Assembly: GCA_002269645.1 (NCBI GenBank)
Contig: NIVC01000314.1
Coordinates: 1-25,436 of the forward strand
DNA from: Macrostomum lignano
Taxonomy: Eukaryota
Direction: 5' to 3'
Length of the DNA: 25,436 nucleotides
A program made the translations under genes and the position numbers. This document shows, piece after piece, positions 53-24,929 of the stretch. The notes below the pieces were generated by a model. That model saw only the letters and a program-made list of their open reading frames with translations. It had not been told where the DNA came from and ran no database searches. The first letter of the stretch is position 1. Each line of letters opens with the position of its first letter.

Positions 53-66
53 AATGCGCGGTCTCT
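53..66. repeat. Target-site duplication of the LINE, copy at the element 3' end (AATGCGCGGTCTCT)
   Basis: Exact 14-bp match to 5821-5834; the bases on either side differ between copies. Confidence 0.93.
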
Positions 67-82
67 TGACTTACTTGACTTA
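65..82 (-). repeat. LINE 3' tail (TAAGTCAAG)2 instead of poly(A)
   Basis: Plus strand CTTGACTTA CTTGACTTA at 65-82; the last two nt (AG on minus) overlap the TSD. Confidence 0.8.
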
Positions 83-176
83 GCTGCAGGGTGGTCCGTA
101 GACACAGCGGGGAGGCGAGGGTCGCCCATTCCGCTAGCCCCTGAAGGCCCGCAGACAGGCAGAGGCGTGGGGCCGG

Positions 177-3100
177 TCAGGGTGGTCCGCCGGTCCGTCC
201 TGCAGCGTGATCTTCCGTTGGGAAGAAACTGGCTCGTCTAGTCGCCCGAAGGAACTGGATGAGCCGTGGGATGCTGTCGGGCTGGCAAACCTCGTCAATG
301 GACGGGTTCGGCCCGAGGTAGCGTAGCCGGTCTCTGTTAAAGAAAGGGCAGTGACAGACAAAGTGCTGAGCATCTTCATTGTCGCACTCGCAAAAGGGGC
401 AAATTTCGCTCTCGAGGTCGCCTCGGAGGAAGCAGTGCCTGGCGAGGTAGCCATGGCCGGTAAGGGTCATGACAAGGGCTCGAATATCCTTCCGATTCTG
501 GTTCAGAAGGATGTTTCTGAGCCTGTGAGACGGGCAAGGAACCGCGGCACGAGATTGCCGGCAGTTTTGGGTGCCCGCCCATCTGTCCCTGTGGAGGGAG
601 TCAGCCCAGTCGTCGATCTGACGATTGATGACTGTCAAGGGCATAGGGACCAGGGGGGCAGGGCCGAAAAAAGAGCCAGAGCCGCCCCTCTTGGCGAGGG
701 TGTCTGCCAGCTCGTTCCCCGGAAACCCTGCGTGCCCTGGGATCCACTTCAGCCTGACAGTATTGCTTCTGGCCAGGAGGTTGAGCTGCCGGGCGCAGTC
801 GGCGACTGTCCGGGAGTTCGTTGTGGTGTGGCAAAGGGCCTGTAAGGCCGCTTGGCTGTCGGAGTGGATGACAATAGTCTTTCCTCTCGTAACCTTGGCG
901 TTTATCTCTGCAGCGCAAGAGCTGATGGCAAGGACTTCGTTCTGGAAGACTGTGGAGAGTCTACCAGTGTGCTGGGCATGCGTGGCAATTACGCGGCCGT
1001 TGATGATGATGCAGACCCCAAAGCCGGCGCGACCGTCTTTGATGGATCCGTCCGTGTAGCAATGGACCTCCTGGAAATTCCAGTGGTCATTGGCAGCATC
1101 CCTAGAGGGGATGGTGACCTTGTAGCGCTGAAAGAGGTTGAGAGTGCGGGTTCGCCGTCAGATAGGACGTGGAGCCCGCCGCTGTCTCTCAAGTCCTTGA
1201 GGCAGAGGTCAGCGTGGGGCAGAAGCTTGCGCTTAGCCATGGCCCTATGGGGCTGGATTCGAATGCCAGCGTCAGCTAGACGGCGGGCAGTCTTAGCCGC
1301 TTCCCTGCGGACAAAGATGTCCAGCGGAGGAATGTTGAGGAAGGCGTTGAGGCCATCGTAAGGAGCAGACGGAGGGGCGCTCATGATCGTGCGACAAGCG
1401 CGCCCTTGCGCTCTCCTGAGAGCCTCTAGACAGGTCTTTATCTGCAGGGCGCTAGCCCAGATCAGGCCGCCATACGAGATAGCGGGCCTAACCATTGCAG
1501 TGTAGATCCACCAGAGGCGCGTGGGGGTGAGCCCCCAGGTGGTGCCGACGGCCCTGCGCAATTGCGCGAGGACTGCGAAGGCCTTTTTGGCTTTTGTTTG
1601 AACGTGGGGAGACCAGTTCAGCCTGTGGTCCAGGGTAATACCCAGACATTTAGTCTGCTTGCAGAAGGGGATTTCCCTTCCGTAAAGCGTGAGCGGCCGA
1701 ATCTGCCACTTGGTCCTGCTGGTGAACATGATCGCTGCGGTCTTAGTCTCAGAGAGCCTTAAACCACAGCGGTCCGCCCATTGCTCAGCAGCGTAGATGA
1801 AGTTCTGAAGAAGGTCCCTGAGGGTATCAGGGGACGGACCAGATGCCACCGCGGTGACATCGTCCGCATATCCAACTTTCAGAATGGGGTCAGGCCGAAC
1901 ATCCCGGAGGAGCTCATCAATGACCATATTCCAGAGAACTGGAGACAGCACCCCACCTTGCGGGCTACCTTTGCAGACGGGGACCGTCCTCTGGTAGCCC
2001 AGCAGACTGGCGGTGGCCGTGCGATGGCTGATCATGTACATGATCCATCTGGTGAGATGTGAGTGCGTTAGCCTCTCACAAAGAGCTCTTCGGAACGCCT
2101 CAAAGAGGACGTTATCGAAGGCGCCAATGATGTCCAGGAAGATCCCCAGAGCAAAGCCACTACCAAGCACGGCCTTCTCGAGTTTATCGACCAGGACGTG
2201 CAGCGCGCTTTCAGTGGAGCGACCCGCCCGAAAAGCGTGCTGGTTCTCGCTGAGAGGTTTGTTCTTCAGCTCAACAGAGAGAAGGCGCCAAAGCACCAGT
2301 CTCTCCATCAGCTTGACCAGGGAGGAGGTCAAGCTGATCGGTCTGAAGGATTTGATAGAATGGTAGTCCGGGCGGCCTGGCTTAGGGATAAAGATCACCT
2401 TTGCCTCGGTCCATGCCTGCGGGACATAACCAAGCGTGATGCATGCCCGAAGAAGGCTGCAAAGTTTGCGCAGGAAGCCTGGGCATTTAACCGCCTCTCT
2501 TAGAAGGGCCGGTACAATGCCGTCGGGTCCTGGGGCTTTGAAAGGCTTGAAGGAATTTGCCGCTCTCACAATGCGGTCCTCCGTGATGATAGATGCAGCC
2601 AGCGCGTGACCTCCCTCCGAGTGATCCGGAGTGGTCTGGTTAGCTGGCTCGTTAGGGAAAAACGCAGTGAGCATTACATCAAGCGTTTCCCCTGGGTTGT
2701 CCGTGGACGTACCGTTGGTGCGTTTGACCGAGGAGAGCTTAGACATTTTGTCCAGCGTGAGCGCTTTCACAACTCTGGAGGTGGGGCGTGAGCCCTCTAG
2801 CTCCTCACAGTATTGTCGCCATTTTTGAGCCTTTGCATTCCTAACCTGCCTTTTAAACTCATGAATTGCTTCATGATAGGCGGTTTGGTCTGCAGGGCTC
2901 TTAGTTTTAGTTGCTCTGCGGTGGAGTCTCTTAGCCCTGCGACGGAGGTTGCCGAGCTCGGGATTCCACCACGGCGCCGATTTTTTCCCTTTATAGGCTT
3001 TTAAAGGGCAGGACGCCTCAAAGGCGGCGGTTAGCGTCTCTGTCAAAACAGTCGCGCACTCATCCGCCTCTCGGCACGACGTGATCGTGGATGGTTGGCC

Positions 3101-3880
3101 AGGAGACCGATGGAATTCCTTCAGGGCGAGCCCGAAGGTTTCCCAATCCGTATTTCTGGCGTTCCGTCTCCACATAACACGAGTTGCGCTACGCGCGGCC
3201 ATTAGGTTGAAGGAGATGAACTTGTGATCCGATAGTGAGGACACTGGAAGCACCCGCCACGCCCCAATACTCTGGTAGAGTCTGGGCGTTGCGAGCGTAG
3301 CGTCGATCACCTCCGACCACCGTCCGTTGTCAAAGGTAGGGGTGGACCCAGAGTTGCAGAACTCGAGGGTCGTAGAGGCAACGTAGGCTAGGAGGTCTTC
3401 GCCTCTCTGATTAATGCCAGTGCTGCCCCAGTGAGTGTGGTGGGCGTTGATGTCGCCGGCAACCATGAGCTCGTAGTTTTTGGCAGAGCAGAGCTCTACC
3501 AGCGTAGCGAGGGCTCTGGGGACGACCGCAGCATCGCCTGGTAGGTAAACCGAGGCAATGAGGGTGGTCTTCCCAGGAAGAAGGTCCTCGGATTGGATGA
3601 CGCAGATGTCCCTGTTGGACAGGTCCGATCTGAGCCACGCACTGAGCGTTTTGCTCGCAAAGATGCAAGCTCTGGGAGGCTGGTTGGCCTCGCGAGGGTA
3701 AGTATAAAAACAATTGTAGCCAGCAGGGGCGTTTTGAGGCTTACCTCTGAGAGTCCAGGGTTCCTGGACGAGGATGAGCCCCGGCTTGTCGAGCTCGGCG
3801 TAACGCATAAGGTTGACCGAGGCTGCGACGCAGTGCTGCAGATTAATCTGCAGGCAATGGATTCCCTGGTTGCTGATCAT
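177..3880 (-). CDS. LINE ORF2 (APE endonuclease - reverse transcriptase - RNase H - CCHC), about 1234 aa if one frameshift at 1134-1157 is repaired
   Basis: ATG at 3880 (MISNQGIHCLQINLQHC). APE residues QEPW, SVYLP, GDINAHH, IDATL, SDH; RT YADD. After the frameshift a second frame reads FQRYKVTIPSR...YTDGS...NEVLAI...HSDSQ...WIPGH...LADTLA (RNase H acidic residues intact), then runs open into the 177..644 ORF with CPFC-x8-H-x4-C and stops at 177-179. Confidence 0.9.
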
Positions 3881-3882
3881 TA

Positions 3883-5349
3883 TCACGCAGTTGGGGAATC
3901 GTTGAGCAGGTCATCCTCCTCCTTTTCAGTGGTGGGTGACCCGCAGACCTCCATGGGAGTTTCAGCGTCCTCAGCAGTTAGGGTGGCTGTGGAGTCCTCC
4001 GCGGACGTGAGCCCAGCGTGGACGTTACCGTCGCCTCTCCTGCGTGCTTCGGTGCTGTCACTGCCCGTCCCCTCTGCCTCGTCGGTCAGGTCGATGCGGG
4101 TGGCGCCAGCCTCCTGGTGAGTCACAGACTCGAACCAGTCGGTCGGAGCCTCCCCGCTTAGAGTCTGGCCTTCTGGCTGTTGGGGTGGAGCGCGAGAAGC
4201 GCGGGCCCGCTCACGATGCGCACGAAGGTTCTTGGCCTGGTCCAGCGCGCGCTGGATCAGGCCGGACCTCCGGGTGCTCCTGGCGGGTCTGCGATTGCGA
4301 TTTCCGGTTTCAGCAGCGCGAACTGCCTTACCGGGCATAGGATCGGCCGTTTGCCTCGGCTTCTTTGCCGGAGGAGCCTGGGCCCCAGTTCCGGTTTCGG
4401 AAGCTTTGGCATTCTTGGCTTCATCAGCTTTCCGCTCCTCGCAACGGAGGATGGTCAGCTGAGTCAGACCAATATGAATTGTGGACTTAGGCGGCAAGCG
4501 CTTAGCCCAGTCATCAGAGAGCCCTAGGATCACCGTAGCCCCCTTCTCCTTGCGGGAAGTGGCGTGGTGTAGGAGCCCGTTGACCTTAAGGTCGGGGTGC
4601 AGCTTTAGCAATATTTGCCTAAGCTGATCTCCGGACTTAATGGCACTGCCGGCCGGGATCCAGACGCGAAAGCGCTGGGTCTTCTGTCGTTCGCCCTCGC
4701 TGGCGAAGACGAGCTTGCCGAGCTTCTTGGGCCAGTTCAGCTTTGGCAGAAGCTCGCGTAGATTGCGGCTGCTCTCCTCCGAGCTGCACCAGATGAAGAT
4801 GCAGCCGTCGGTCTTGGCAGACTTGACCACGCTCACAGGGCGGCCCGCCAGGAGCTGGTCGATGAGCGCAGCATCGATGGTGCGCCAGGCACTGTCGAGC
4901 TCGTCGGCCGTGAGGTCCTGCTCTTCCCCGAAGACGATGACCGCCGGTTGGAGCTTGACCTTTGAGGCGTAGTTGGTGGCGGCGGTTCCCGAAGGCCCGG
5001 CCGCGCTTGTAGCAGGTATACTGGGTGGCTCACCAGCGGGGGTTGTATCCTGGGGGGCAGGGGTTGCTGTGGTTCCTTTCGGCCCAACAGCAGCCTCGCC
5101 CTCCCTAGGTTCCCCTTCCGCCGGTGGCCGGCCCGCAGTACCCCGTAGTCGCCGTCGCCGCTCGTTGCGGCGTTGGTTGCGGGTGCGTCGGGCTTCAGCG
5201 GAGGGCCCGGTTGCGCGTGCGGGCATGTCACCAGCCGAGCCGGCGGCAAGCCCATCTGCCCCCGGTGGGGCGGCGCTGGTGCCAGAGTCACCGGCCGGAG
5301 TTGCCGGGGCCCCGGCTTCAGCGGGGGTTAAAGAGGCGGATGACGCCAT
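3883..5349 (-). CDS. LINE ORF1 (about 488 aa; an in-frame ATG at 5451 would give 522 aa), low-complexity ends and a central DUF4780-like domain
   Basis: Open frame directly upstream of ORF2. Ala/Pro/Gly-rich N-terminus, Arg-rich patch RRTRNQRRNERRRRLR, central globular segment (CIFIWC...FRVWIP...VILGL...IHIG) recalling Loa-type ORF1. No CCHC knuckle seen. The domain name is from recall and unverified. Confidence 0.85.
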   Translation of the reverse strand: MASSASLTPAEAGAPATPAGDSGTSAAPPGADGLAAGSAGDMPARATGPSAEARRTRNQRRNERRRRLRGTAGRPPAEGEPREGEAAVGPKGTTATPAPQDTTPAGEPPSIPATSAAGPSGTAATNYASKVKLQPAVIVFGEEQDLTADELDSAWRTIDAALIDQLLAGRPVSVVKSAKTDGCIFIWCSSEESSRNLRELLPKLNWPKKLGKLVFASEGERQKTQRFRVWIPAGSAIKSGDQLRQILLKLHPDLKVNGLLHHATSRKEKGATVILGLSDDWAKRLPPKSTIHIGLTQLTILRCEERKADEAKNAKASETGTGAQAPPAKKPRQTADPMPGKAVRAAETGNRNRRPARSTRRSGLIQRALDQAKNLRAHRERARASRAPPQQPEGQTLSGEAPTDWFESVTHQEAGATRIDLTDEAEGTGSDSTEARRRGDGNVHAGLTSAEDSTATLTAEDAETPMEVCGSPTTEKEEDDLLNDSPTA

Positions 5350-5569
5350 AGCTGAAAGCGGGAAGGAGTGAGCTGAGTCACAAAAGAAAGAGGAAAGAAG
5401 AAAAAGAAAAGGACCGCTAGCGACCGGACAACCCCCGGCCTTCCAGCCCATCGGCACGGTCAAACACCTTAGGCATTAGGGGGTACGTTAAGCAGTACCA
5501 CGGCCTGCAGGCTGGCAAGCCAGACCCGCATACCCAAATTCGGCCGAAGCCACTGGATGGGTCGCCAGC

Positions 5570-5820
5570 GTCGGAGCCCAGTCTGTCCAGCAGCCCTAGG
5601 GTCTGCCTTGAACACACGCGGGGACGAGTACCCTGGGTCGACTTGTGAAACAGCGTGAGGGGGGGGGTCTGCGGCTGCCAGTGGCAAATAGCGGGTGCAG
5701 ACCTCCCTCTCCAGCCTTGACCTGCTGAATATAGGGGCAGGCGTGAAGCATCGCAGACCGTAGCCCTTAGGCCTGGTCTGTCTCATACTTCACTGGCGTG
5801 CTGAATACACCTTCGCGTGC
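5570..5820 (-). ncRNA. Candidate HDV-like self-cleaving ribozyme at the LINE 5' terminus
   Basis: Minus strand: P1 GCACGCG (5820-5814) / CGCGUGU (5620-5614) with G1-U wobble; P2 GUCGACCCA (5642-5634) / UGGGCUCCGAC (5580-5570); P3 GGG (5633-5631) / CCC (5623-5621); L3 UACUCGU (5630-5624); P1.1 AC / GU (5613-5612); P4 5611-5586; J4/2 CAGAC (5585-5581). Folded by hand only. Confidence 0.75.
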
Positions 5821-5834
5821 AATGCGCGGTCTCT
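5821..5834. repeat. Target-site duplication of the LINE, copy at the element 5' end (AATGCGCGGTCTCT)
   Basis: Exact 14-bp match to 53-66. Confidence 0.93.
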
Positions 5835-6065
5835 CTTCCATCATAAATACGCCGTTGCTATCCTGTTGCTTTTGAGAGCTTGAGTTGCGTGACTCGTGCC
5901 CAGCTCAGCTCAGCTGGCTCAGACGTTGAATTCAATTTGATCTTGATTTTGTTAAAAGTAGAATGTTTGTTTCAATTATTGTGTAGATTATTAACTTTCA
6001 CAGCTACGGTAAGAACCCAGTTCAACTCTCGACAAATAAATAAATGAATTAAAAACATTCACATG

Positions 6066-6071
6066 TTTATT
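6066..6071 (-). terminator. Candidate poly(A) signal AATAAA of the lectin gene
   Basis: TTTATT on plus = AATAAA on minus, about 225 nt downstream of the lectin stop, in AT-rich sequence. Confidence 0.4.
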
Positions 6072-6295
6072 GCAGCTTACCAGACAGGCCTTTTAAAGAT
6101 CAAATTTATCTGAAAATTCTCAATATAATATTTGAGTTAGATATGGTTATTTCTGAGTGTTTTAAAGACTGGACGAAAATTTCCTAGACGTGATGCAGTT
6201 AAATTGGGCATAAAAATTTCACGTGAAACGCTTCACTGAACTGCATCGAGACCGCTCGCTTCTGTTGTAAATTCTTTGCTACTCAAGACGCTGCT

Positions 6296-7049
6296 TCAGA
6301 ACACGGACTGGCACTCGCAGATGTACCTGCGAGCACTGATGCAGGAGTCATCGTCAACGCCTCCAGTTGAATGGCCACTCCAAAGATTTGTGCACTCCAA
6401 TGACGCAGCACCGTTCGGCTCTCCAGAGTGCCATACGCTGGCGTTCACGGGCAGGTTGCAGGCGGCCCAGAACCAGTCAGAGTGCGCATTCGAAGTTCCA
6501 GATCCGCCAAGGAAAAAATCGGAGGAGCTGTCAATCAGCTGCTTCAGTGACCTCAGGTGCAGAGCCTCATCAAGGTCGATCGCATCAGAGAACTTGGTCA
6601 GTCCGGGATCCGCACTGCAGGTCAGGTTGGCGTTGTTCCAGGTGAGAGTCTCCGACGTGACCACCTTGTACGAGGTGCCGTATCTCGTGTGCTCGTATCC
6701 GGACGGACACAGGCGACCCGGAGGTACGCCGGGCAGAGACCTCACATACACAGTCACCTGGTGAGTGCAGCTCGGCACAGACTGCACACGGTGACTGCAC
6801 GCATCGAACAGGAACAGCTTGCACTGACAGGCTCCAGCTGTCAGCACTGAGAAGGCCTGACACTTGTCCTTCCTAGCGCAGGCGAGCTGCATTCGAGCGG
6901 AGTGCACAGACCGGACACGGTGCTGGTGAAGTCGGAGCTCACGCAGTCCAGTCCGGTGGTTTGGTGGAATTTCAGCCTGGCGGAGAGGACTCGGACAGCA
7001 CCGCAGGGACCCACAGCAGCAGTAGTGATAGCACAGCTTGCAGCAGCAT
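6296..7049 (-). CDS. Secreted PAN/apple-like + C-type lectin domain protein (about 251 aa), intronless, with two 1-nt frameshifts (about 6987 and 6886)
   Basis: ATG at 7049 gives signal peptide MLLQAVLSLLLLWVPAVLS. A second frame gives RLKFHQTTGLDC...TPLEC; a third gives LACARKDKCQAFSV...CKLF, then CTLD motifs CPSGY, LTWNNANLTC, FLGG, WFW, WHSGEPN, LEC, VDDDSC, RYICE. 754 nt + 2 = 252 codons. Confidence 0.8.
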
Positions 7050-8965: not shown

Positions 8966-9127
8966 CCTCGTGTTGCTATTGGCTCCTCCTAGAAAGAAAA
9001 ATTGGCTCTGCACTTTTACTAACAGCGCTTTCAATTCCATTTAATAGAAAGACAGGCTAATATGGTGTGTTTCCGAGTTCCACTGCCGGCTCCTCTTAAG
9101 CACTAAGCTTAAGCTTTGCCTCTAGGC

Positions 9128-10327
9128 TAACCAAAGACGCATTCCGACAGTTAACCAAAGACGCATTCCGACAGTTAACCAAAGACGCATTCCGACAGTT
9201 AACTAAAGACACATTCCGACAGTTAACCAAAGACACATTCCGACAGTTAACCAAAGACACATTCCGACAGTTAACCAAAGACACATTCCGACAGTTAACC
9301 AAAGACACATTCCGACAGTTAACTAAAGACGCATTCCGACAGTTAACCAAAGACACATTCCGACAGTTAACCAAAGACGCATTCCGACAGTTAACCAAAG
9401 ACACATTCCGACAGTTAACCAAAGAAACATTCCGACAGTTAACCAAAGACACATTCCGACAGTTAACCAAAGACGCATTCCGACAGTCAACCAAAGACAC
9501 ATTCCGACAGTTAACTAAAGACGCATTCCGACAGTTAACCAAAGACACATTCCGACAGTTAACCAAAGACGCATTCCGACAGTCAACCAAAGACACATTC
9601 CGACAGTTAACTAAAGACGCATTCCGACAGTTAACCAAAGACACATTCCGACAGTTAACTAAAGACGCATTCCGACAGTTAACCAAAGACACATTCCGAC
9701 AGTTAACCAAAGACACATTCCGACAGTCAACCAAAGACACATTCCGACAGTTAACTAAAGACGCATTCCGACAGTCAACCAAAGACACATTCCGACAGTT
9801 AACTAAAGACGCATTCCGACAGTTAACCAAAGACACATTCCGACAGTTAACCGACAGTTAACCAAAGACACATTCCGACAGTTAACCAAATAAAAATTCC
9901 GACAGTTAACCAAAGACACATTCCGACAGTTAACCAAATAAACATTCCGACAGTTAACCAAAGACACATTCCGACAGTTAACCAAAGACGCATTCCGACA
10001 GTTAACCAAAGACACATTCCGACAGTTAACCAAAGACGCATTCCGACAGTTAACCAAAGACACATTCCGACAGTTAACTAAAGACGAATTCCGACAGTTA
10101 ACCAAAGACGCATTCCGACAGTTAACCAAAGACACATTCCGACAGTTAACTAAAGACGAATTCCGACAGTTAACCAAAGACACATTCCGACAGTTAACCA
10201 AAGACACATTCCGACAGTCAACCAAAGACACATTCCGATAGCTGACCAAAGACGCATTCCGACAGTTAACCAAAGACGCATTCCGATAGCTGACCAAAGA
10301 CACATTCCGACAGTTAACCAAAGACAC
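9128..10327. repeat. 24-bp minisatellite, consensus CATTCCGACAGTTAACCAAAGACA, about 49-50 copies
   Basis: Head-to-tail units with a few recurring variants (gacac/gacgc, aaccaa/aactaa, gttaac/gtcaac) and one 10-nt partial duplication near 9841-9860. Confidence 0.97.
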
Positions 10328-10389
10328 AAGCGCAAAGACTTGAATAGGGAAACAAGAACGAGGCAACAGGGACAAGAGAGGCTCCGGCA

Positions 10390-11151
10390 ATGTCCGAAGC
10401 CACCGAGAAGACCGAGCTCGTCCGTCGCAGCAGGCCGGCGGTTTCAAGCGCTGCTTCGGCTGGAGGCGACGACGACAAAGACGGACCAACAATAAAAGTT
10501 GGCGAAGTGATCGACGCCCTCGGTGTTGGCCGCTTCCAAGCTCTCCTGACGGTGTTTGCCGGCCTGCTTCTACTAGGAGAGTCCATGGGCATCACTCTGA
10601 TCGGAATTGTGGGCCGCACCATCCAGTGCCAGTGGCAACTGCCCAATCTGAGGCTGGCCATCTTCTCGCTGGCCATTTTCATGGGCTTCCTGCTGTTCTG
10701 CCCGCTGTGGGGCTTCCTGGCTGATCAGCATGGCAGGCGGGGCGTCATGATCCTCGGCATGGCCTTCACCGGCTACTACATGCTCATCTCCGCGCTGTCG
10801 CCCAGCTTCGAATGGCTGGTCTTCCTGCGCACTGTGGCCGGAGCCTTCATGGCAACCACGCCGCAGGGCCTGGTGTACATGGTCGAGTGCTGCCCGGCAA
10901 CCGCCAGGGCCTATCTGTTGAACATCGGCTTTGTCGTCTGGAGTGTCGGCCCCGTGCTGGAGCTCGCCGTCGCTCTGGGACTCAACGCTGCCGGCGTCGG
11001 CAACGAAACCTGGCGGATCCTCGTCATTCTGTCTGCCCTGCCCATCATCGGCAGCTGCGGGGCTTACTGGCTGGTCCCGGAGACGCCTCGGTTCTACCTG
11101 GTGCACGGCCAAATGGACAAGTGCAAGGCTTCGCTCAGGCACATCGCCAGG
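10390..11151 (+). CDS. SVOP-like (SV2-related) MFS transporter, exon 1
   Basis: IDALGVGRFQ, LWGFLADQHGRR (MFS motif A), WLVFLR, YMVE, WRIL, PETPRF; donor AGG|GTGTGT at 11151/11152. Confidence 0.9.
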
Positions 11152-20670: not shown

Positions 20671-20882
20671 TGTAATTGCCTCGCAATATTATTATCAATT
20701 TGTTCTAAATAGGCAAGTGAGTTATATTATAAATGTACATCTTGTGTCGCATGAGTCATGTACGCCGTATTATTGATTTGTACGCGTAAAACCTCAAATA
20801 TATATATATCGCTAACTGGCCAGTTTGGGCCCCGTAATTTATTTTTCTCGCTCAGCTTAACACGCGGCCTTCAGACTTTACA
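20671..20882 (+). repeat. 5' LTR (212 bp)
   Basis: Identical by eye to 25051-25262; 5-bp terminal inverted repeat TGTAA/TTACA; TATAAAT at 20728-20734. Confidence 0.97.
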
Positions 20883-20883
20883 G

Positions 20884-20899
20884 TGGCGTCGCAAGCAAG
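20884..20899 (+). promoter_or_regulatory. Primer-binding site TGGCGTCGCAAGCAAG (tRNA-Ser-like pattern, tentative)
   Basis: TGG starts 1 nt after the LTR. TGGCG-N6-GCARG resembles the complement of eukaryotic tRNA-Ser 3' ends; the tRNA identity needs the host tRNA set. Confidence 0.65.
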
Positions 20900-20919
20900 C
20901 CCACTTGGTCCAGTCACTC

Positions 20920-23900
20920 ATGGCTCAATTCATCTCACTGCCACCCCCTGAGCAATTCAGCACTAGTGCAGATCAACAGAATGCCGGTAAACGCTGGAAC
21001 AAATGGTCCGATCATTTTTGTGACTTTATCGAAGCGTCAGGCATCAAAGACGAAACTCAGAAGTGCAAGCTCCTGGCCTACACGGCCGGCAGAGAAATCG
21101 CGCAAATCATTAAAGACCTGCCAGATGACAAGAAAGACAGCCTCGAAACTCTGCTCGCAGCAATAAAAGAGCACTTCAAGGAGCGCAACAACATCGTATT
21201 TGCCCGCTATCAGTTTCGTCTATGCGTTCAGCAAACCGGAGAGCCAGTGGACTCCTGGTACTCCCGACTCAACTCAGCGGCCGAGACATGCGAGTTCTCA
21301 GCACTCAAGGACTCCCTAATCAGAGATCAGATAGTGGCGACATGCTGCTCCGATAAACTTCGGCGAAGATTGCTGCAGGAGTCCAACATCTCTCTCGGCG
21401 ATGCGTTGAGACAAGCGCGCGCGTTTGAAGCAGCAGAAGAGCAGGCCACGGCCATTGAGAACTCCAGTAGCATCGCAGCAGTGCACAGAGCGGCACCGAA
21501 GCAGTTCAGAGACAGCGGAACGCGCCCGAACAGTCAGCGGGTCCCTGGTGGCCAAGCAAACAGCGGCCCAACCAGCTGCTATCGATGCGGCGAACGCGGG
21601 CACAGCTCATGCAACGCGGCAAAAGGCAAAACCTGCCTGGCATGCGGCAAGCCAAACCATCTCGCCAAAGCATGCAGACAACGCAGGCCTCAAACAAGCT
21701 CCAGCATCAACGCCGTAGCGGACAAAGAAGCTGAGGCGGTCTTCATCGATCACGATTCGCTAAATGAGGAGGCCTTCACTATCCAGTCGCAAAAAACGGC
21801 ACCCAGACGCAACTCCGCCAACACTAATCTGAGGATCGAGGGCAAGGACTTCATCGTACTCGTGGATAGTGGAGCCAGCTGCAACGTCATGAGCGAGGAG
21901 AACTTCCGGCGGCTAAGAAATGTTCGACTGCGCAGCGCCATCCATCCAATTTTCAGCTACGGGTCCACAACGCCTCTCCAAGTCCTGGGTGTCGCTGACC
22001 TCAACGTGAGCACCGCAGCTAGCAGACAACTAGCTTCATTCTACATCACCAAAGGCTGTGGAACCACACTACTCGGTCGAGAAACCGCTTTCAACATGGG
22101 AATTCTGCACATCCAACATCCAACAGTTGAAGTCAACTCGGTGCAGACCACGGAAAATCTAGCCGCATCAGGTATTCAAGAGCTGTTCTCCAAGTACAGA
22201 GATGTCGACCAAGATCTTCCAACCGAACTCCGCATCAGCAGCATCCTTGGTGAGTTTAAGTCAATCTTCGAAGGCCTTGGCTGCGTTAAGGGCGTCGAGG
22301 TCGACGTTCGTCTTCGACCAGAAGCTGTCCCAGTCTGTCACCCACCCTCCAGAGTTCCCGTACACCAGCGGTCGGCGGTCATCGCGGAACTTCGGGCTCT
22401 CCTCGACCAAGGAATCATCGAGCGCGTCAACGGCCCGTCACCGTGGGTCTCCCGCATGGTTGTCGTCCCAAAAGAAGGCGGTGGCATCCGCATCTGCCAA
22501 GACCTGCGCGACGTCAACTCATTTGCCGTGCCAGAAAAGCAGCCCATCCCAACCTTTGAGGAGATCACGGACGAAATGGCGGGTTCCACGGTATTCAGCG
22601 AGCTCGACATCGTAAAGGCTTTCCACCAAATTCTTGTCAAACCGGAATCCCGTCACGTCTTCACCTTCAGCACCCCACTGGGTCTCATGCGACTGACCAG
22701 ACTCAGCATGGGATTCACCAACGCATCCGAGATATTGCAAAGGGTTATGACAGGCGTCCTGAGCGGCCTTGACGGTGTCCGATGGGCACACGATGACATC
22801 ACCGTCTTTGCGAGCACGATGGAAGAGCACAACATCCGACTAAAACAGTGCTTCAAGCGCCTACAAGACCATGGAATCACACTCAACCCGAACAAGTGTC
22901 GCCTGGCACAGCCTTTCATCGATTTTCTTGGTATGCGCATCAGCGCACGAGGCGTTCAGCCTGCAGCCGAGAAGATCAAGGCCGTCAAAGACTTTAAGGA
23001 GCCAACAAATGTGTCAGAGCTGCGCTCATTCCTCGGTTTGGCCACCTACCTGTCCAGGTTCGTTCCGAACTTCTCAGATCTGACGCAGCCAATGCGAGAA
23101 CTGCTAAAAAAAGGTCGTAAATGGTGCTGGTCAGAAAGGCAACAAAAAGCATTCCTGCAAACAAGAGCAGCGATCTGCAATGAGAGCGTCCTGGCCTTCT
23201 TTGACGTGAATCTCCCAACAGAAGTTCATGTGGACGCCTCGCCAGTCGGCCTGGGTGCCATTCTCAGCCAAGTGGATGAGAAAGGCGTTCGCAAACCGGT
23301 CGCCTTCGCCAGCAGGTCGCTCACGCCAGTTGAGCAGCGATACGCTCAAATTGAACGCGAGGCGCTTGCGGTGAAATTCGGGTGCCTACGTTTCGAGCAC
23401 TACCTCAGCGGCTGCCCAGATCTCACAGTCATCACGGATCACCGCCCATTAGTCCCGCTTTTTCAACCTGGTTCCAGGCCTCCACCAAGGATTGAACGGA
23501 TGGCTTTAAGAGTGCAGCACCTCAAATTCAAGCTCATCTATCAGCCGGGGCCACAGAATCCAGCGGATGTCCTCAGTAGACAACCTGAAATGCAGACAAA
23601 GGACAACCCCGGGGAACTCCTGGACAGACGCTTCATCAACGCAGTCGCCATCGGCTCTACTCCGAAAGGACTGAACTTTGCAACAATTCAGGAGGCTTCA
23701 AAGTCAGACGGCACGATCCAAGCAGCTCTATCAGCTCTACGAACTGGCCAATGGGACAAGCAGAACAGAAATCTTCGAGCTTTGTCCTGCCTGCAGCAGG
23801 AGCTTTCAGAACATGACGGCGTGCTACTACGGAGCTCGTTGATCGTGATCCCGAGCAGCTTACGTCGGACGGTGCTCCAGCTGGCACATGCAGGCCACCA

Positions 23901-24929
23901 ATGCTGCCGAAAAACTATGGACAGACTGCAAACCAAAGTATGGTGGCCAGCGATGAGAAGCGACTGCCAGACGTTCGTCCAGTCTTGCTTCCCCTGCCAA
24001 GCGACATCGCCGAAGAGCCTCGCACCGCCACCACTCTCACCGTCGCAACTTCCGGACGGAGCATGGCTGGTTCTTGGAATGGACTTTTACGGCCCAGTCC
24101 AAGGGAAAATGCTTCTGGTGACAACCGATCTCTTTTCAAAATTTCCCGAGGTCGACATAGTCAGCTCAACATCAGCAGAGGCAGTGCTTCCGCATCTCCG
24201 GACTCTGTTTAGCAGATACGGCATCCCGTTGGAAATCGTCAGCGACAATGGACCTCCGTTTAACTCGGCAGAATTCACAAACTTCCTCTCAGAGTTCGGC
24301 ATCAAGCATCGCCGGATCTGTCCGCTGCACCCCGAGGCGAACGGAGCGACCGAGCGAGTCAACAGGTGCATCAACAAGGTCATCAGAGCGGCCATCGCAG
24401 AAGGACGCAACTGGCGCACCGCACTCGACGACTGGCTGCTCGCTCATCGCGTCACTCCGCACTCGCAACCGGCGTGGCACCAGCCGAACTGCTCATGGGC
24501 CGAGCTCTCAACGACGGCCTCCCGTCAATCCAACCATCGCAACCTGTGCAGCACGACCGAGCCGAACTCGCAAAGCGTCACGAGGCCTACAACAACCAGA
24601 TGGCAGCAGGTTTCAACCGCTCCAGGAGGGCCAAGGCAGCCAATGTCAAGCCGGGTTCGGCGGTTCTCCGCAAGCGGACGAGACGCACGAAAATTCAAAC
24701 GCCTTTCGAGCTCGAACCCTGGACCGTCACCGACAGGCGAGGCGATTCCTACGTCCTGCGGCAAGGCGACCGGACATGCACTCGCCACCTGACGCACATC
24801 CGGCCTCTGACAGCGACCGAGGACCCACCACCAGAAGCGGACGCTGGCGCCGCCTCGCCGGAGCGCGGCATTGCTGAGAGGCCGCACCCGAGAGCGGCCA
24901 AGGACAAGCCTATCAGCTACAGAGTTTGA
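20920..24929 (+). CDS. gag-pol: Gag-Pol polyprotein (about 1336 aa) with a 1-nt frameshift at about 24465 near the end of the integrase core
   Basis: MAQFISLPPP start. Knuckles CYRCGERGHSSC and CLACGKPNHLAKAC; protease LVDSGAS; RT ELDIVKAFHQI, WAHDD; RNase H VDASPVG, YAQIERE, TDHRPL; integrase H-H-C-C, MDFYGP, SDNGPPF, NGATER. CAC TCG (G)CA ACC joins the 24366..24929 frame (ATGVAPAELLMGR...). Confidence 0.93.

What the first reader, a model, noticed from the sequence alone, without database searches (positions are those of the whole stretch)
5570..5820. HDV-like double-pseudoknot ribozyme whose cleavage site is exactly the TSD-defined 5' end of a Loa-like LINE
Seen: on the minus strand every element of the HDV fold occurs in the correct order. 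P1 GCACGCG/CGCGUGU is 7 bp with the G1-U wobble at the scissile position. P2 GUCGACCCA/UGGGCUCCGAC is 9 bp with two bulged Cs. P3 is GGG/CCC; L3 is UACUCGU; a 26-nt P4 hairpin follows; J4/2 is CAGAC, fitting C-N-R-A-N with the putative catalytic C at 5585. L3 has AC where HDV has CC, and the J1/4 partner is GU where HDV has GG, a compensatory change in P1.1. G1 (5820) is the first base inside the independently defined 14-bp TSD. Established: HDV-like ribozymes process the 5' ends of R2, R4, SART, Baggins (Loa) and RTE elements in arthropods, nematodes and chordates. Inference: this is an active or recently active member, and I know of no description of this variant (A-U P1.1, 171-nt J1/2) or of one in a probable flatworm host. 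A second candidate J4/2-P2' (CGAAU-UUGGGU, about 5532-5542) lies downstream, and a competing helix GCUGCUGGA/UCCAGUGGC could give an alternative fold.
Basis: partly seen in the sequence, partly recalled or inferred. Interest (0 to 1): 0.88.

Follow-up and report, generated by a model that had tools for sequence, protein, structure and literature searches.

The report
HDV-like ribozyme at a flatworm LINE's 5' end
The first ~250 bases of a jumping gene (a LINE retrotransposon) in what is very probably the flatworm Macrostomum lignano can fold into a self-cutting RNA of the well-known HDV-like type. The predicted cut falls exactly at the element's first base, which makes this a solid new example of a known trick rather than a new kind of thing.

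Summary

Chance does not explain it. With the 5'-terminal 7-mer fixed, a loose HDV-like descriptor hits 30 of 20,000 shuffles, and 3 of 20,000 with a 7-bp P1.

Two relatives carry the same core. One of them, L005 (63% ORF2 identity, 55% UTR identity), begins at the base homologous to G5820. It keeps every pair through six compensatory double changes: two in P1, two in P1.1 and two in P2. The 171-nt J1/2 is a conserved structured domain closed by a helix next to P1 and P2.

A distant relative, L008, has a compact HDV-like ribozyme that Rfam nearly recognises. It also starts exactly at its own TSD-defined 5' end.

The novelty claims fail:
- Separations of 23 to over 700 nt between the two P1 strands are published for R2 ribozymes.
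- A planarian R2 ribozyme structure has been predicted.
- A P1.1 with an A-U pair appears in the Rfam F. prausnitzii consensus.

Cleavage was not tested, and this copy has an ORF2 frameshift.

Verdict: a real feature and a new member of a known kind.

The parts
5821..5834 (-). 5' copy of the target-site duplication AGAGACCGCGCATT
   Evidence: Exact 14/14 match with 53-66; 0.01 matches expected by chance.
53..66 (-). 3' copy of the target-site duplication
   Evidence: It follows the element's 3' end ...CAGCTAAGTCAAGTAAGTCAAG.
67..5820 (-). Full-length LINE: 5' UTR, ORF1, ORF2 with APE, RT and RNase H, and a short 3' tandem repeat
   Evidence: TSD. Pfam Exo_endo_phos_2, RVT_1 and RNase_H. Colinear with P0002 at 63% identity.
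5814..5820 (-). P1 5' strand GCACGCG; predicted scissile bond is 5' of G5820
   Evidence: Pairs with 5620-5614. In L005 the homologous strand is GCCUGC at contig bases 1-6, with two compensatory double changes.
5643..5813 (-). J1/2, a 171-nt structured peripheral domain. It has a closing helix at 5810-5800 / 5654-5645 and a conserved long hairpin at about 5793-5743.
   Evidence: MFE -70.1 kcal/mol, z = -3.2, with the two ends paired. The same architecture is found in L005. The inner hairpin is kept with 3 compensatory changes.
5634..5642 (-). P2 5' strand GUCGACCCA
   Evidence: Pairs with 5580-5570. Two compensatory double changes against L005, one of them shared with L001. Relatives have two extra base pairs, inserted on both strands.
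5621..5633 (-). P3 (GGG/CCC) enclosing L3 UACUCGU
   Evidence: P3 is invariant in W, L005 and L001. L3 fits U-N-N-N-C-G-U in all three and in L008.
5614..5620 (-). P1 3' strand CGCGUGU, directly after P3
5612..5613 (-). J1/4 GU, the partner of L3 A5629 and C5628 (P1.1)
   Evidence: W has A-U and C-G. L005 has C-G and U-A, so both pairs changed and both are kept. L001 has C-G plus a U.U mismatch.
5586..5611 (-). P4 hairpin
   Evidence: Present in the MFE. L001 has GGCAGACC/GGUCUGCC. L005 has an unrelated sequence that forms a 10-11 bp hairpin at the same place.
5581..5585 (-). J4/2 CAGAC with the putative catalytic C5585
   Evidence: A C directly 3' of P4 is kept in all three: W GGA-C-AGAC, L001 GAA-C-GUG, L005 UAG-C-UGC. 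L008 has CUAAC.
5570..5580 (-). P2 3' strand UGGGCUCCGAC
5532..5562 (-). Conserved hairpin just 3' of the ribozyme: ACCCA ... GGC-UUCG-GCC ... UGGGU.
   Evidence: It folds in W, L001 and L005. L005 has CCGGGU here, which cannot pair with its own P2 strand CUCAGA.
3883..5451 (-). ORF1 (no Pfam match; possible ATG starts at 5451 or 5349)
   Evidence: 62-71% identical to P0001 and 35% to L005 ORF1.
180..3886 (-). ORF2 (APE, RT, RNase H), broken by one frameshift between 1145 and 1130
   Evidence: tblastn with P0002 switches frame at residues 905/911.
6296..6907 (-). Upstream host ORF with a C-type lectin domain on the same strand; a possible source of read-through transcription
   Evidence: Pfam Lectin_C, E = 2.3e-5. 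Whether it is expressed, or co-transcribed with the LINE, is inference.

Best explanation
The 5' UTR of this APE-RT-RNase H LINE encodes a large HDV-like self-cleaving ribozyme. The host is Macrostomum lignano or a very close relative.

Proposed mechanism:
1. The element is transcribed as part of a longer RNA, from an upstream host promoter or from heterogeneous start sites.
2. The terminal heptamer GCACGCG pairs with CGCGUGU 200 nt downstream to form P1.
3. P2, P3, P1.1 and P4 complete the nested double pseudoknot.
4. The 171-nt J1/2 folds into its own domain. Its closing helix holds the far ends of P1 and P2 together.
5. C5585 in J4/2 catalyses scission of the bond 5' of G5820.
6. The released RNA starts with a 5'-OH at the element's first base, so full-length reverse transcription yields copies that begin exactly at G5820.

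Shown here: the sequence features, their statistical excess, the conservation and covariation, and the exact coincidence with the TSD.

Inferred: catalysis, co-transcription, and the 'pinch' role of the J1/2 closing helix.
For: 1. All helices are present at the stated coordinates.
2. G5820 is the first base after an exact 14-bp TSD.
3. The anchored shuffle test gives 30/20,000, or 3/20,000 with a 7-bp P1. The same test on L005 gives 94/10,000.
4. L005 is only 55% identical in the UTR and begins at the base homologous to G5820.
5. L005 keeps every pair. The double changes are two in P1 (A-U to C-G, C-G to U-A), both P1.1 pairs, and two in P2. P3 is invariant, and P4 is replaced by a different hairpin.
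6. L001 shares the P2 compensation and the core.
7. L3 fits U-N-N-N-C-G-U, and a C directly 3' of P4 is conserved.
8. The J1/2 domains of W and L005 each fold with z about -3 and have a closing helix beside P1 and P2. The inner hairpin covaries. This matches the published P1.2 'pinch' (PMC4908430).
9. The relative L008 has a compact HDV-like ribozyme scoring 31.9 bits against drz-agam-1 (E = 0.012) and 32.2 bits against HDV-F-prausnitzii. Its first base is the first base after a 12-bp TSD.
10. HDV-like ribozymes at the 5' ends of baggins, R4, Dong, L1Tc, RTE and R2 are established (PMC3774820, PMC6765202).
Against: - No Rfam HDV-like model matches the window, even at E <= 10. The 171-nt insert and the pseudoknots are the likely reason, but this is still a failed test.
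- Only two close relatives could be retrieved, and L001 lacks the P1 5' strand because its contig is cut about 40 nt short.
- L001 has a U.U mismatch in P1.1.
- J4/2 after the C is not conserved (AGAC, GUG, UGC).
- In L005 the C could be paired at the base of P4.
- P1 in L005 is 6 bp and starts with G-C rather than G.U.
- The core alone is not more stable than shuffles in W (z = -0.28).
- No cleavage assay and no RNA 5'-end data exist.
- A precise 5' end could also come from a fixed transcription start.
Confidence: 0.8

Rival explanations
1. The fold is a real, conserved 5' UTR RNA structure but no longer, or never, cleaves. It could instead serve translation initiation, protein binding or RNA stability. 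The exact 5' end would then be set by a fixed transcription start of an internal promoter.
For: Catalysis is untested. J4/2 beyond the C is variable and L001 has a P1.1 mismatch. No Rfam match. Many LINEs of the I/jockey group use internal promoters (background knowledge). HDV-like ribozymes have also been linked to translation initiation (PMC4908430 introduction).
Against: Covariation specifically preserves P1 between the terminal heptamer and a site 200 nt away, and also preserves the 2-bp P1.1. These features matter for positioning the scissile bond. L3, G1 and the C are conserved. L008 in the same clade has a near-canonical ribozyme at its TSD-defined end. The first bases GCACGCG and GCCUGCA do not resemble each other as an initiator motif would.
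Confidence: 0.13
2. Chance resemblance: a GC-rich UTR in which a reader who already knew the 5' end could assemble an HDV-like drawing.
For: The descriptor with J1/2 up to 400 nt is unspecific, with about 12 distinct loci in 51 kb. The core z-score in W is -0.28.
Against: The anchored test gives 0.15%, or 0.015% with a 7-bp P1. Six compensatory double changes occur with no broken pair in a relative that is 55% identical. L005 starts at the homologous base.
Confidence: 0.03
3. The ribozyme is real but uses a different P1. The candidates are the second GCACGC at 5801-5796, and the strand just 5' of P2 (the compact form suggested by GCUCGC at L001 76-81).
For: GCACGCC at 5801 gives a 6-bp P1. In L001, GCUCGC pairs over 6 bp with GCGAGC and leaves a 2-nt J1/2.
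Against: The TSD puts the element's end at 5820, not 5801. The 5801 site is not complementary in L005. The strand 5' of P2 is UUUCAC in W and cannot form P1. In W and L005 that strand is the 3' arm of the J1/2 closing helix. Cleaving there would discard the conserved J1/2 domain, which the copies retain.
Confidence: 0.04

Closest known systems
HDV-like ribozymes at the 5' ends of non-LTR retrotransposons that cleave at the element's first base (baggins, R4, Dong, L1Tc, RTE)
   Same: The position (first bases of the element), the fold order P1-J1/2-P2-P3-L3-P3'-P1'-J1/4-P4-J4/2-P2', G1 at the cut, and the presumed role of freeing the element RNA from a co-transcript (PMC3774820, PMC6765202).
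   Different: The host is a macrostomid flatworm and this LINE family has not been described. J1/2 is 171 nt and structured. P1.1 has one A-U pair. No activity data exist.
R2 ribozymes with very long J1/2 (silkmoths 216-498 nt; P1 and P1' separated by up to over 700 nt in honeybee)
   Same: P1 is formed between a distant 5' strand and the 7 nt directly after P3/L3. The J1/2 loop is large, and part of it is needed for activity in silkmoth (PMC3774820).
   Different: R2 is site-specific in 28S rDNA and often cuts inside the 28S sequence. R2 has a restriction-like endonuclease and a single ORF. The silkmoth ribozymes lack P4, whereas this one has P4 and cuts at the element's own first base.
drz-Agam-2-1 and other large HDV-like ribozymes with a P1.2 peripheral helix
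   Same: J1/2 forms a stable domain whose closing helix sits next to the distal ends of P1 and P2, the published 'pinch' that speeds cleavage about 1000-fold (PMC4908430).
   Different: Here the domain is a multibranch of about 165 nt with a conserved inner hairpin. Its effect on rate is untested.
The compact HDV-like ribozyme of the related LINE in L008 (sub-threshold Rfam drz-agam-1 / HDV-F-prausnitzii match)
   Same: Same LINE group (ORF2 36% identical, APE-RT-RNase H). The ribozyme's G1 is the first base after the TSD. L3 is UCCACGU, J4/2 is CUAAC, and P1 opens with a G.U pair.
   Different: L008 has a short J1/2, a canonical CC/GG P1.1, an ORF1 with DUF4780, and a (TAA)n tail. The window element has a 171-nt J1/2, an AC/GU P1.1, an ORF1 with no Pfam match, and a TAAGTCAAG repeat tail.
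Twister-variant ribozymes of Schistosoma mansoni non-LTR retrotransposons
   Same: A flatworm LINE whose 5' end is proposed to be processed by a small self-cleaving ribozyme (PMC8501958).
   Different: A different ribozyme class (twister versus HDV-like) and different LINE families.

Membership tests
HDV-like self-cleaving ribozymes | Nested double-pseudoknot order P1, P2, P3, P1', P4, P2', with P1' directly after P3 | tested here: met
   All strands are present in the right order at the stated coordinates. P2, P3 and P4 appear in the nested MFE.
HDV-like self-cleaving ribozymes | P1 of about 7 bp, starting with G at the cleavage site and supported by covariation | tested here: met
   W has GCACGCG/CGCGUGU with G.U first. 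L005 has GCCUGC/GCAGGC. There are two compensatory double changes.
HDV-like self-cleaving ribozymes | 3-bp P3 closing a roughly 7-nt L3 that carries the conserved U...CG nucleotides | tested here: met
   GGG/CCC is invariant. L3 is UACUCGU, UCUCCGU and UUCUCGU, compared with UCCuCGu and UCUaCGU in the Rfam consensus lines.
HDV-like self-cleaving ribozymes | P1.1: two pairs between L3 and J1/4 | tested here: met
   W has A-U and C-G. L005 has C-G and U-A. L001 has C-G plus a U.U mismatch.
HDV-like self-cleaving ribozymes | Catalytic C at the start of J4/2 | tested here: inconclusive
   A C directly 3' of P4 is conserved in all three sequences. The following bases vary, and its role can only be shown by mutation.
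HDV-like self-cleaving ribozymes | Site-specific Mg2+-dependent self-scission giving a 5'-OH at G1 | not testable with these tools
   This needs in vitro transcription or RNA end mapping.
HDV-like self-cleaving ribozymes | Match to a curated Rfam HDV-like covariance model | tested here: not met
   No hit at gathering score or at E <= 10 in 5300-6000. The models do not allow a 171-nt J1/2. The relative L008 scores 31.9 bits against a gathering score of 37.
Ribozyme-processed LINE 5' end | The cleavage site coincides with the element's 5' terminus as defined independently | tested here: met
   A 14-bp TSD ends at 5821. The L005 contig starts at the homologous base. L008 behaves the same way.
Loa / Baggins clade of LINEs | Phylogenetic placement of the RT with Loa/Baggins reference elements | not testable with these tools
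   Only the domain content is shown: APE, RT and RNase H, two ORFs and a short 3' tandem repeat. No Repbase references were available.

The most novel reading that the evidence does not exclude
The four strands around the J1/2 domain may form a conserved strand-exchange switch. The strands are A (P1 5'), B (just 3' of P1), C (just 5' of P2) and D (P1').

- In every lineage A resembles C and B resembles D, although the sequences differ between lineages. W has GCAC / GUGU / CACA / UGUG. L005 has CCUGC / GCAGG / UCUGC / GCAGG. L001 has C = GCUCGC and D = GCGAGC.
- The RNA can therefore adopt either A:D plus B:C (P1 plus the closing helix, the active form) or A:B plus C:D (an inactive form).
- This could be a co-transcriptional folding guide or a regulated on/off step for cleavage in a natural HDV-like ribozyme.
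Probability: 0.15. Interest if true: 0.55.

Novelty: new member of a known kind. Interest (0 to 1): 0.36.

Why it matters
This adds a well-supported HDV-like ribozyme to a free-living flatworm model, Macrostomum, in an RNase H-bearing LINE family not described before. It shows that this LINE group uses both compact and large-J1/2 versions of the ribozyme.

The W/L005 pair gives natural covariation for the 2-bp P1.1 and for a long-range P1. It also gives a conserved, structured J1/2 domain that could be used to test the 'pinch' model on a natural sequence.

For genome annotation, it provides a rule for the exact 5' end of this family. It does not change how these ribozymes or LINEs are understood.

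Tried and rejected
- Rfam at gathering score on the whole window, and at E <= 10 on 5300-6000, gave only spurious miRNA hits.
- A metagenome scan with a core pattern returned 3 chance bacterial hits and missed even L001's sample.
- The ORF1 search found one homolog. An ORF1-core profile search found nothing useful.
- Scans of genome contigs and viral contigs with the ORF1 profile and with a 19-base core pattern gave no relatives. The 9 hits from the pattern scan of genome contigs lie in bacterial genomes and were not inspected; I take them to be chance matches.
- An exact look-up of the window's ORF1 and ORF2 variants found none in the collection.
- The contig of P0003 has no DNA on hand. The contigs of P0038, P0045 and P0029 start inside ORF1, so they have no UTR.
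- L006, L007, L009 and L011 showed no convincing HDV-like core with the descriptor or with Rfam.
- L010 has a partial candidate (P1, P3, L3, J1/4 GG) but no clean P2 and no Rfam hit.
- Rejected: the second P2' at about 5536, the competing helix, and the P1 at 5801. None of the three is conserved in relatives.

Full report
**What is in the sequence.** Read on the minus strand, the window holds a full-length LINE.
- An exact 14-bp direct repeat, AGAGACCGCGCATT, lies at 5821-5834 and 53-66. Only 0.01 matches are expected by chance.
- The element is therefore 67-5820, and its first base is G5820.
- It has a 357-nt 5' UTR and an ORF1 (5463/5451 to 3883) with no Pfam match.
- Its ORF2 carries APE and RT domains (3886-989). 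The RNase H domain continues in another frame (1148-180).
- tblastn with the closest full-length relative places a single frameshift between 1145 and 1130. This copy is therefore not autonomous.
- Fragments that are 97-98% identical are named Macrostomum lignano in UniRef.
- About 475 nt upstream on the same strand there is an ORF with a C-type lectin domain. Read-through transcription into the element is therefore plausible, but this is an inference.

**Checking the observation.**
- P1: 5820-5814 with 5620-5614, 7 bp, G.U first.
- P2: 5642-5634 with 5580-5570, 9 bp with two bulged C.
- P3: GGG/CCC.
- L3: UACUCGU.
- J1/4: GU, pairing with A5629 and C5628.
- P4: 26 nt, 5611-5586.
- J4/2: CAGAC, with C5585.
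- J1/2: 171 nt.

The nested MFE of 5642-5570 returns P2, P3 and P4.

**Is it more than chance?** A descriptor that allows J1/2 up to 400 nt is unspecific. It hits about a dozen distinct places in the window. One of them is a second possible P1, GCACGC at 5801.

The TSD fixes the 5' end independently, and that changes the test. With the terminal 7-mer held and the rest of the UTR shuffled with dinucleotides preserved, the descriptor hits 30 of 20,000 shuffles. With a 7-bp P1 it hits 3 of 20,000.

**Relatives.** Only two close relatives could be retrieved.
- L001 is a JGI metagenome contig whose ORF1 is 62-71% identical.
- L005 is a Logan contig with ORF2 63% identical and the UTR 55% identical.
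- Both carry the same core.
- L005 begins at the base homologous to G5820, with GCCUGCA.

The pair table compares W with L005:

| Helix | W | L005 |
|---|---|---|
| P1, pair 1 | G.U | G-C |
| P1, pair 3 | A-U | C-G |
| P1, pair 4 | C-G | U-A |
| P1.1 | A-U and C-G | C-G and U-A |
| P2, 5636/5578 | C-G | U-A |
| P2, 5641/5571 | U-A | C-G (also in L001) |
| P3 | GGG/CCC | unchanged |

- P2 also gains two base pairs in both relatives, through insertions on both strands.
- P4 is replaced in L005 by an unrelated sequence that forms a 10-11 bp hairpin.
- No pair is broken in W or L005. L001 has one U.U mismatch in P1.1.
- L3 keeps the form U-N-N-N-C-G-U in all three.
- A C directly 3' of P4 is kept in all three, although the rest of J4/2 varies.
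- L001's contig stops about 40 nt short of the expected 5' end, so its P1 5' strand cannot be seen.

- The second P2' (UGGGU at 5536-5532) pairs with ACCCA at 5562-5558. Together they form a hairpin conserved in all three sequences. In L005 the equivalent bases cannot pair with L005's own P2 strand.
- The competing helix is strong in W at -13 kcal/mol. It is absent in the relatives, at -4.2 and -4.6 kcal/mol.
- The P1 candidate at 5801 is not complementary in L005.

**The J1/2 domain.**
- In both W and L005 it folds into a closed multibranch domain (z = -3.2 and -2.8).
- Its closing helix lies 3-4 nt after P1 and 2 nt before P2. The coordinates are W 5810-5800 / 5654-5645 and L005 11-19 / 154-162.
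- The inner long hairpin (about 5793-5743) is conserved, with three compensatory changes.
- This is the architecture published for large HDV-like ribozymes. There a P1.2 helix 'pinches' P1 and P2 together and speeds cleavage by nearly three orders of magnitude (PMC4908430).
- The strand just 5' of P2 at first looked like an alternative compact P1 in L001 (GCUCGC). It is the 3' arm of this closing helix.
- In each lineage that strand resembles the P1 5' strand, and the helix's 5' arm resembles P1'. An alternative inactive pairing (A:B plus C:D) is therefore possible in all three. With three sequences this is only a lead.

**A positive control from the clade.** L008 is a 297-kb ENA contig whose ORF2 is 36% identical.
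- It carries an element bounded by the 12-bp TSD TACGAAAAATGC and a (TAA)n tail.
- The first base after the 5' TSD, G4025, is also the first base of two sub-threshold Rfam matches. These are drz-agam-1 (31.9 bits, gathering score 37, E = 0.012) and HDV-F-prausnitzii (32.2 bits).
- This LINE group therefore does place HDV-like ribozymes exactly at the element's 5' end.
- The window element is a version with an expanded J1/2. The Rfam models do not allow such an insert, which probably explains why Rfam finds nothing in the window.

**Comparison with what is known.**
- HDV-like ribozymes at the 5' ends of R2, R4, Dong, baggins, L1Tc and RTE are established (PMC3774820, PMC6765202).
- In R2, P1 and P1' are separated by 23 to over 700 nt. 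Silkmoth J1/2 loops of 216-498 nt cleave in vitro (PMC3774820).
- A structure for the planarian Schmidtea R2 ribozyme is given in the same paper.
- The Rfam F. prausnitzii consensus printed has L3 UCU... with J1/4 AG. That is a P1.1 containing an A-U pair, exactly as in L005.
- In Schistosoma, LINE 5' ends are processed by twister variants (PMC8501958).
- No paper in the library links Macrostomum with ribozymes.
- The long J1/2, the flatworm host and the A-U P1.1 are therefore not new in kind. What is new is this family and this host genus.
- Assignment to the Loa clade could not be tested.

**Verdict.** My confidence that the family's 5' UTR is a self-cleaving HDV-like ribozyme cutting 5' of G5820 is about 0.8. 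Catalysis remains unproven, and the main rival (about 0.13) is a conserved but non-catalytic structure with the 5' end set by transcription start. It is a new member of a known kind, and interest is moderate to low.

Noticed in passing
L008 4013-4122 and 9891-9902: A distantly related LINE (ORF2 36% identical, (TAA)n tail) is bounded by the 12-bp TSD TACGAAAAATGC. The first base after the 5' TSD is also the first base of a sub-threshold Rfam drz-agam-1 / HDV-F-prausnitzii match.
   Followed up: yes
window 5820-5807, 5650-5643 and 5620-5613 (-); L005 1-15, 158-162 and 189-194; L001 76-81 and 109-114: The P1 5' strand resembles the strand just 5' of P2, and the strand just 3' of P1 resembles P1'. 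This holds in each lineage although the sequences differ. An alternative inactive pairing (A:B plus C:D) therefore competes with P1 plus the J1/2 closing helix.
   Followed up: partly
window 5562-5532 (-): A conserved hairpin lies immediately 3' of the ribozyme: ACCCA...UGGGU enclosing a GGC-UUCG-GCC stem-loop. It is present in W, L001 and L005. Its function is unknown.
   Followed up: partly
L005 1 and about 5955-6492: The Logan contig (run ERR14788467) starts exactly at the element's first base but reads about 540 nt past the element's 3' end into the flank. This would fit a cleaved read-through transcript if the run is RNA. The library type could not be checked.
   Followed up: partly
window 1130-1145 (-): A single frameshift in ORF2 lies between the RT and RNase H domains. 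The relatives have one continuous ORF2 of about 1230 aa.
   Followed up: yes
window 5801-5796 (-): A second copy of GCACGC lies 19 nt inside the element and could form a 6-bp P1. It is not conserved in L005.
   Followed up: yes
window 6296-6907 (-): An ORF with a C-type lectin domain lies on the same strand about 475 nt upstream of the LINE's 5' end. It is a possible source of co-transcription.
   Followed up: partly
window 20758-24792 (+): An uninterrupted 1344-aa Ty3/gypsy-type gag-pol ORF with protease, RT, RNase H and integrase domains and a PNMA-like gag.
   Followed up: no
window 9096-10492 (-): Two ORFs with repeated Defensin_3-like cysteine motifs lie in a strongly strand-skewed, AT-richer stretch. 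I could not tell whether this is a real gene or a repeat artefact.
   Followed up: no
L010 250-335: Another relative (ORF2 36% identical) has a partial HDV-like candidate near its apparent 5' end. It has P1 GUCGGCA/UGCCGAC, P3 CCC/GGG, L3 UCCACGA and J1/4 GG, but no clean P2 and no Rfam hit.
   Followed up: partly
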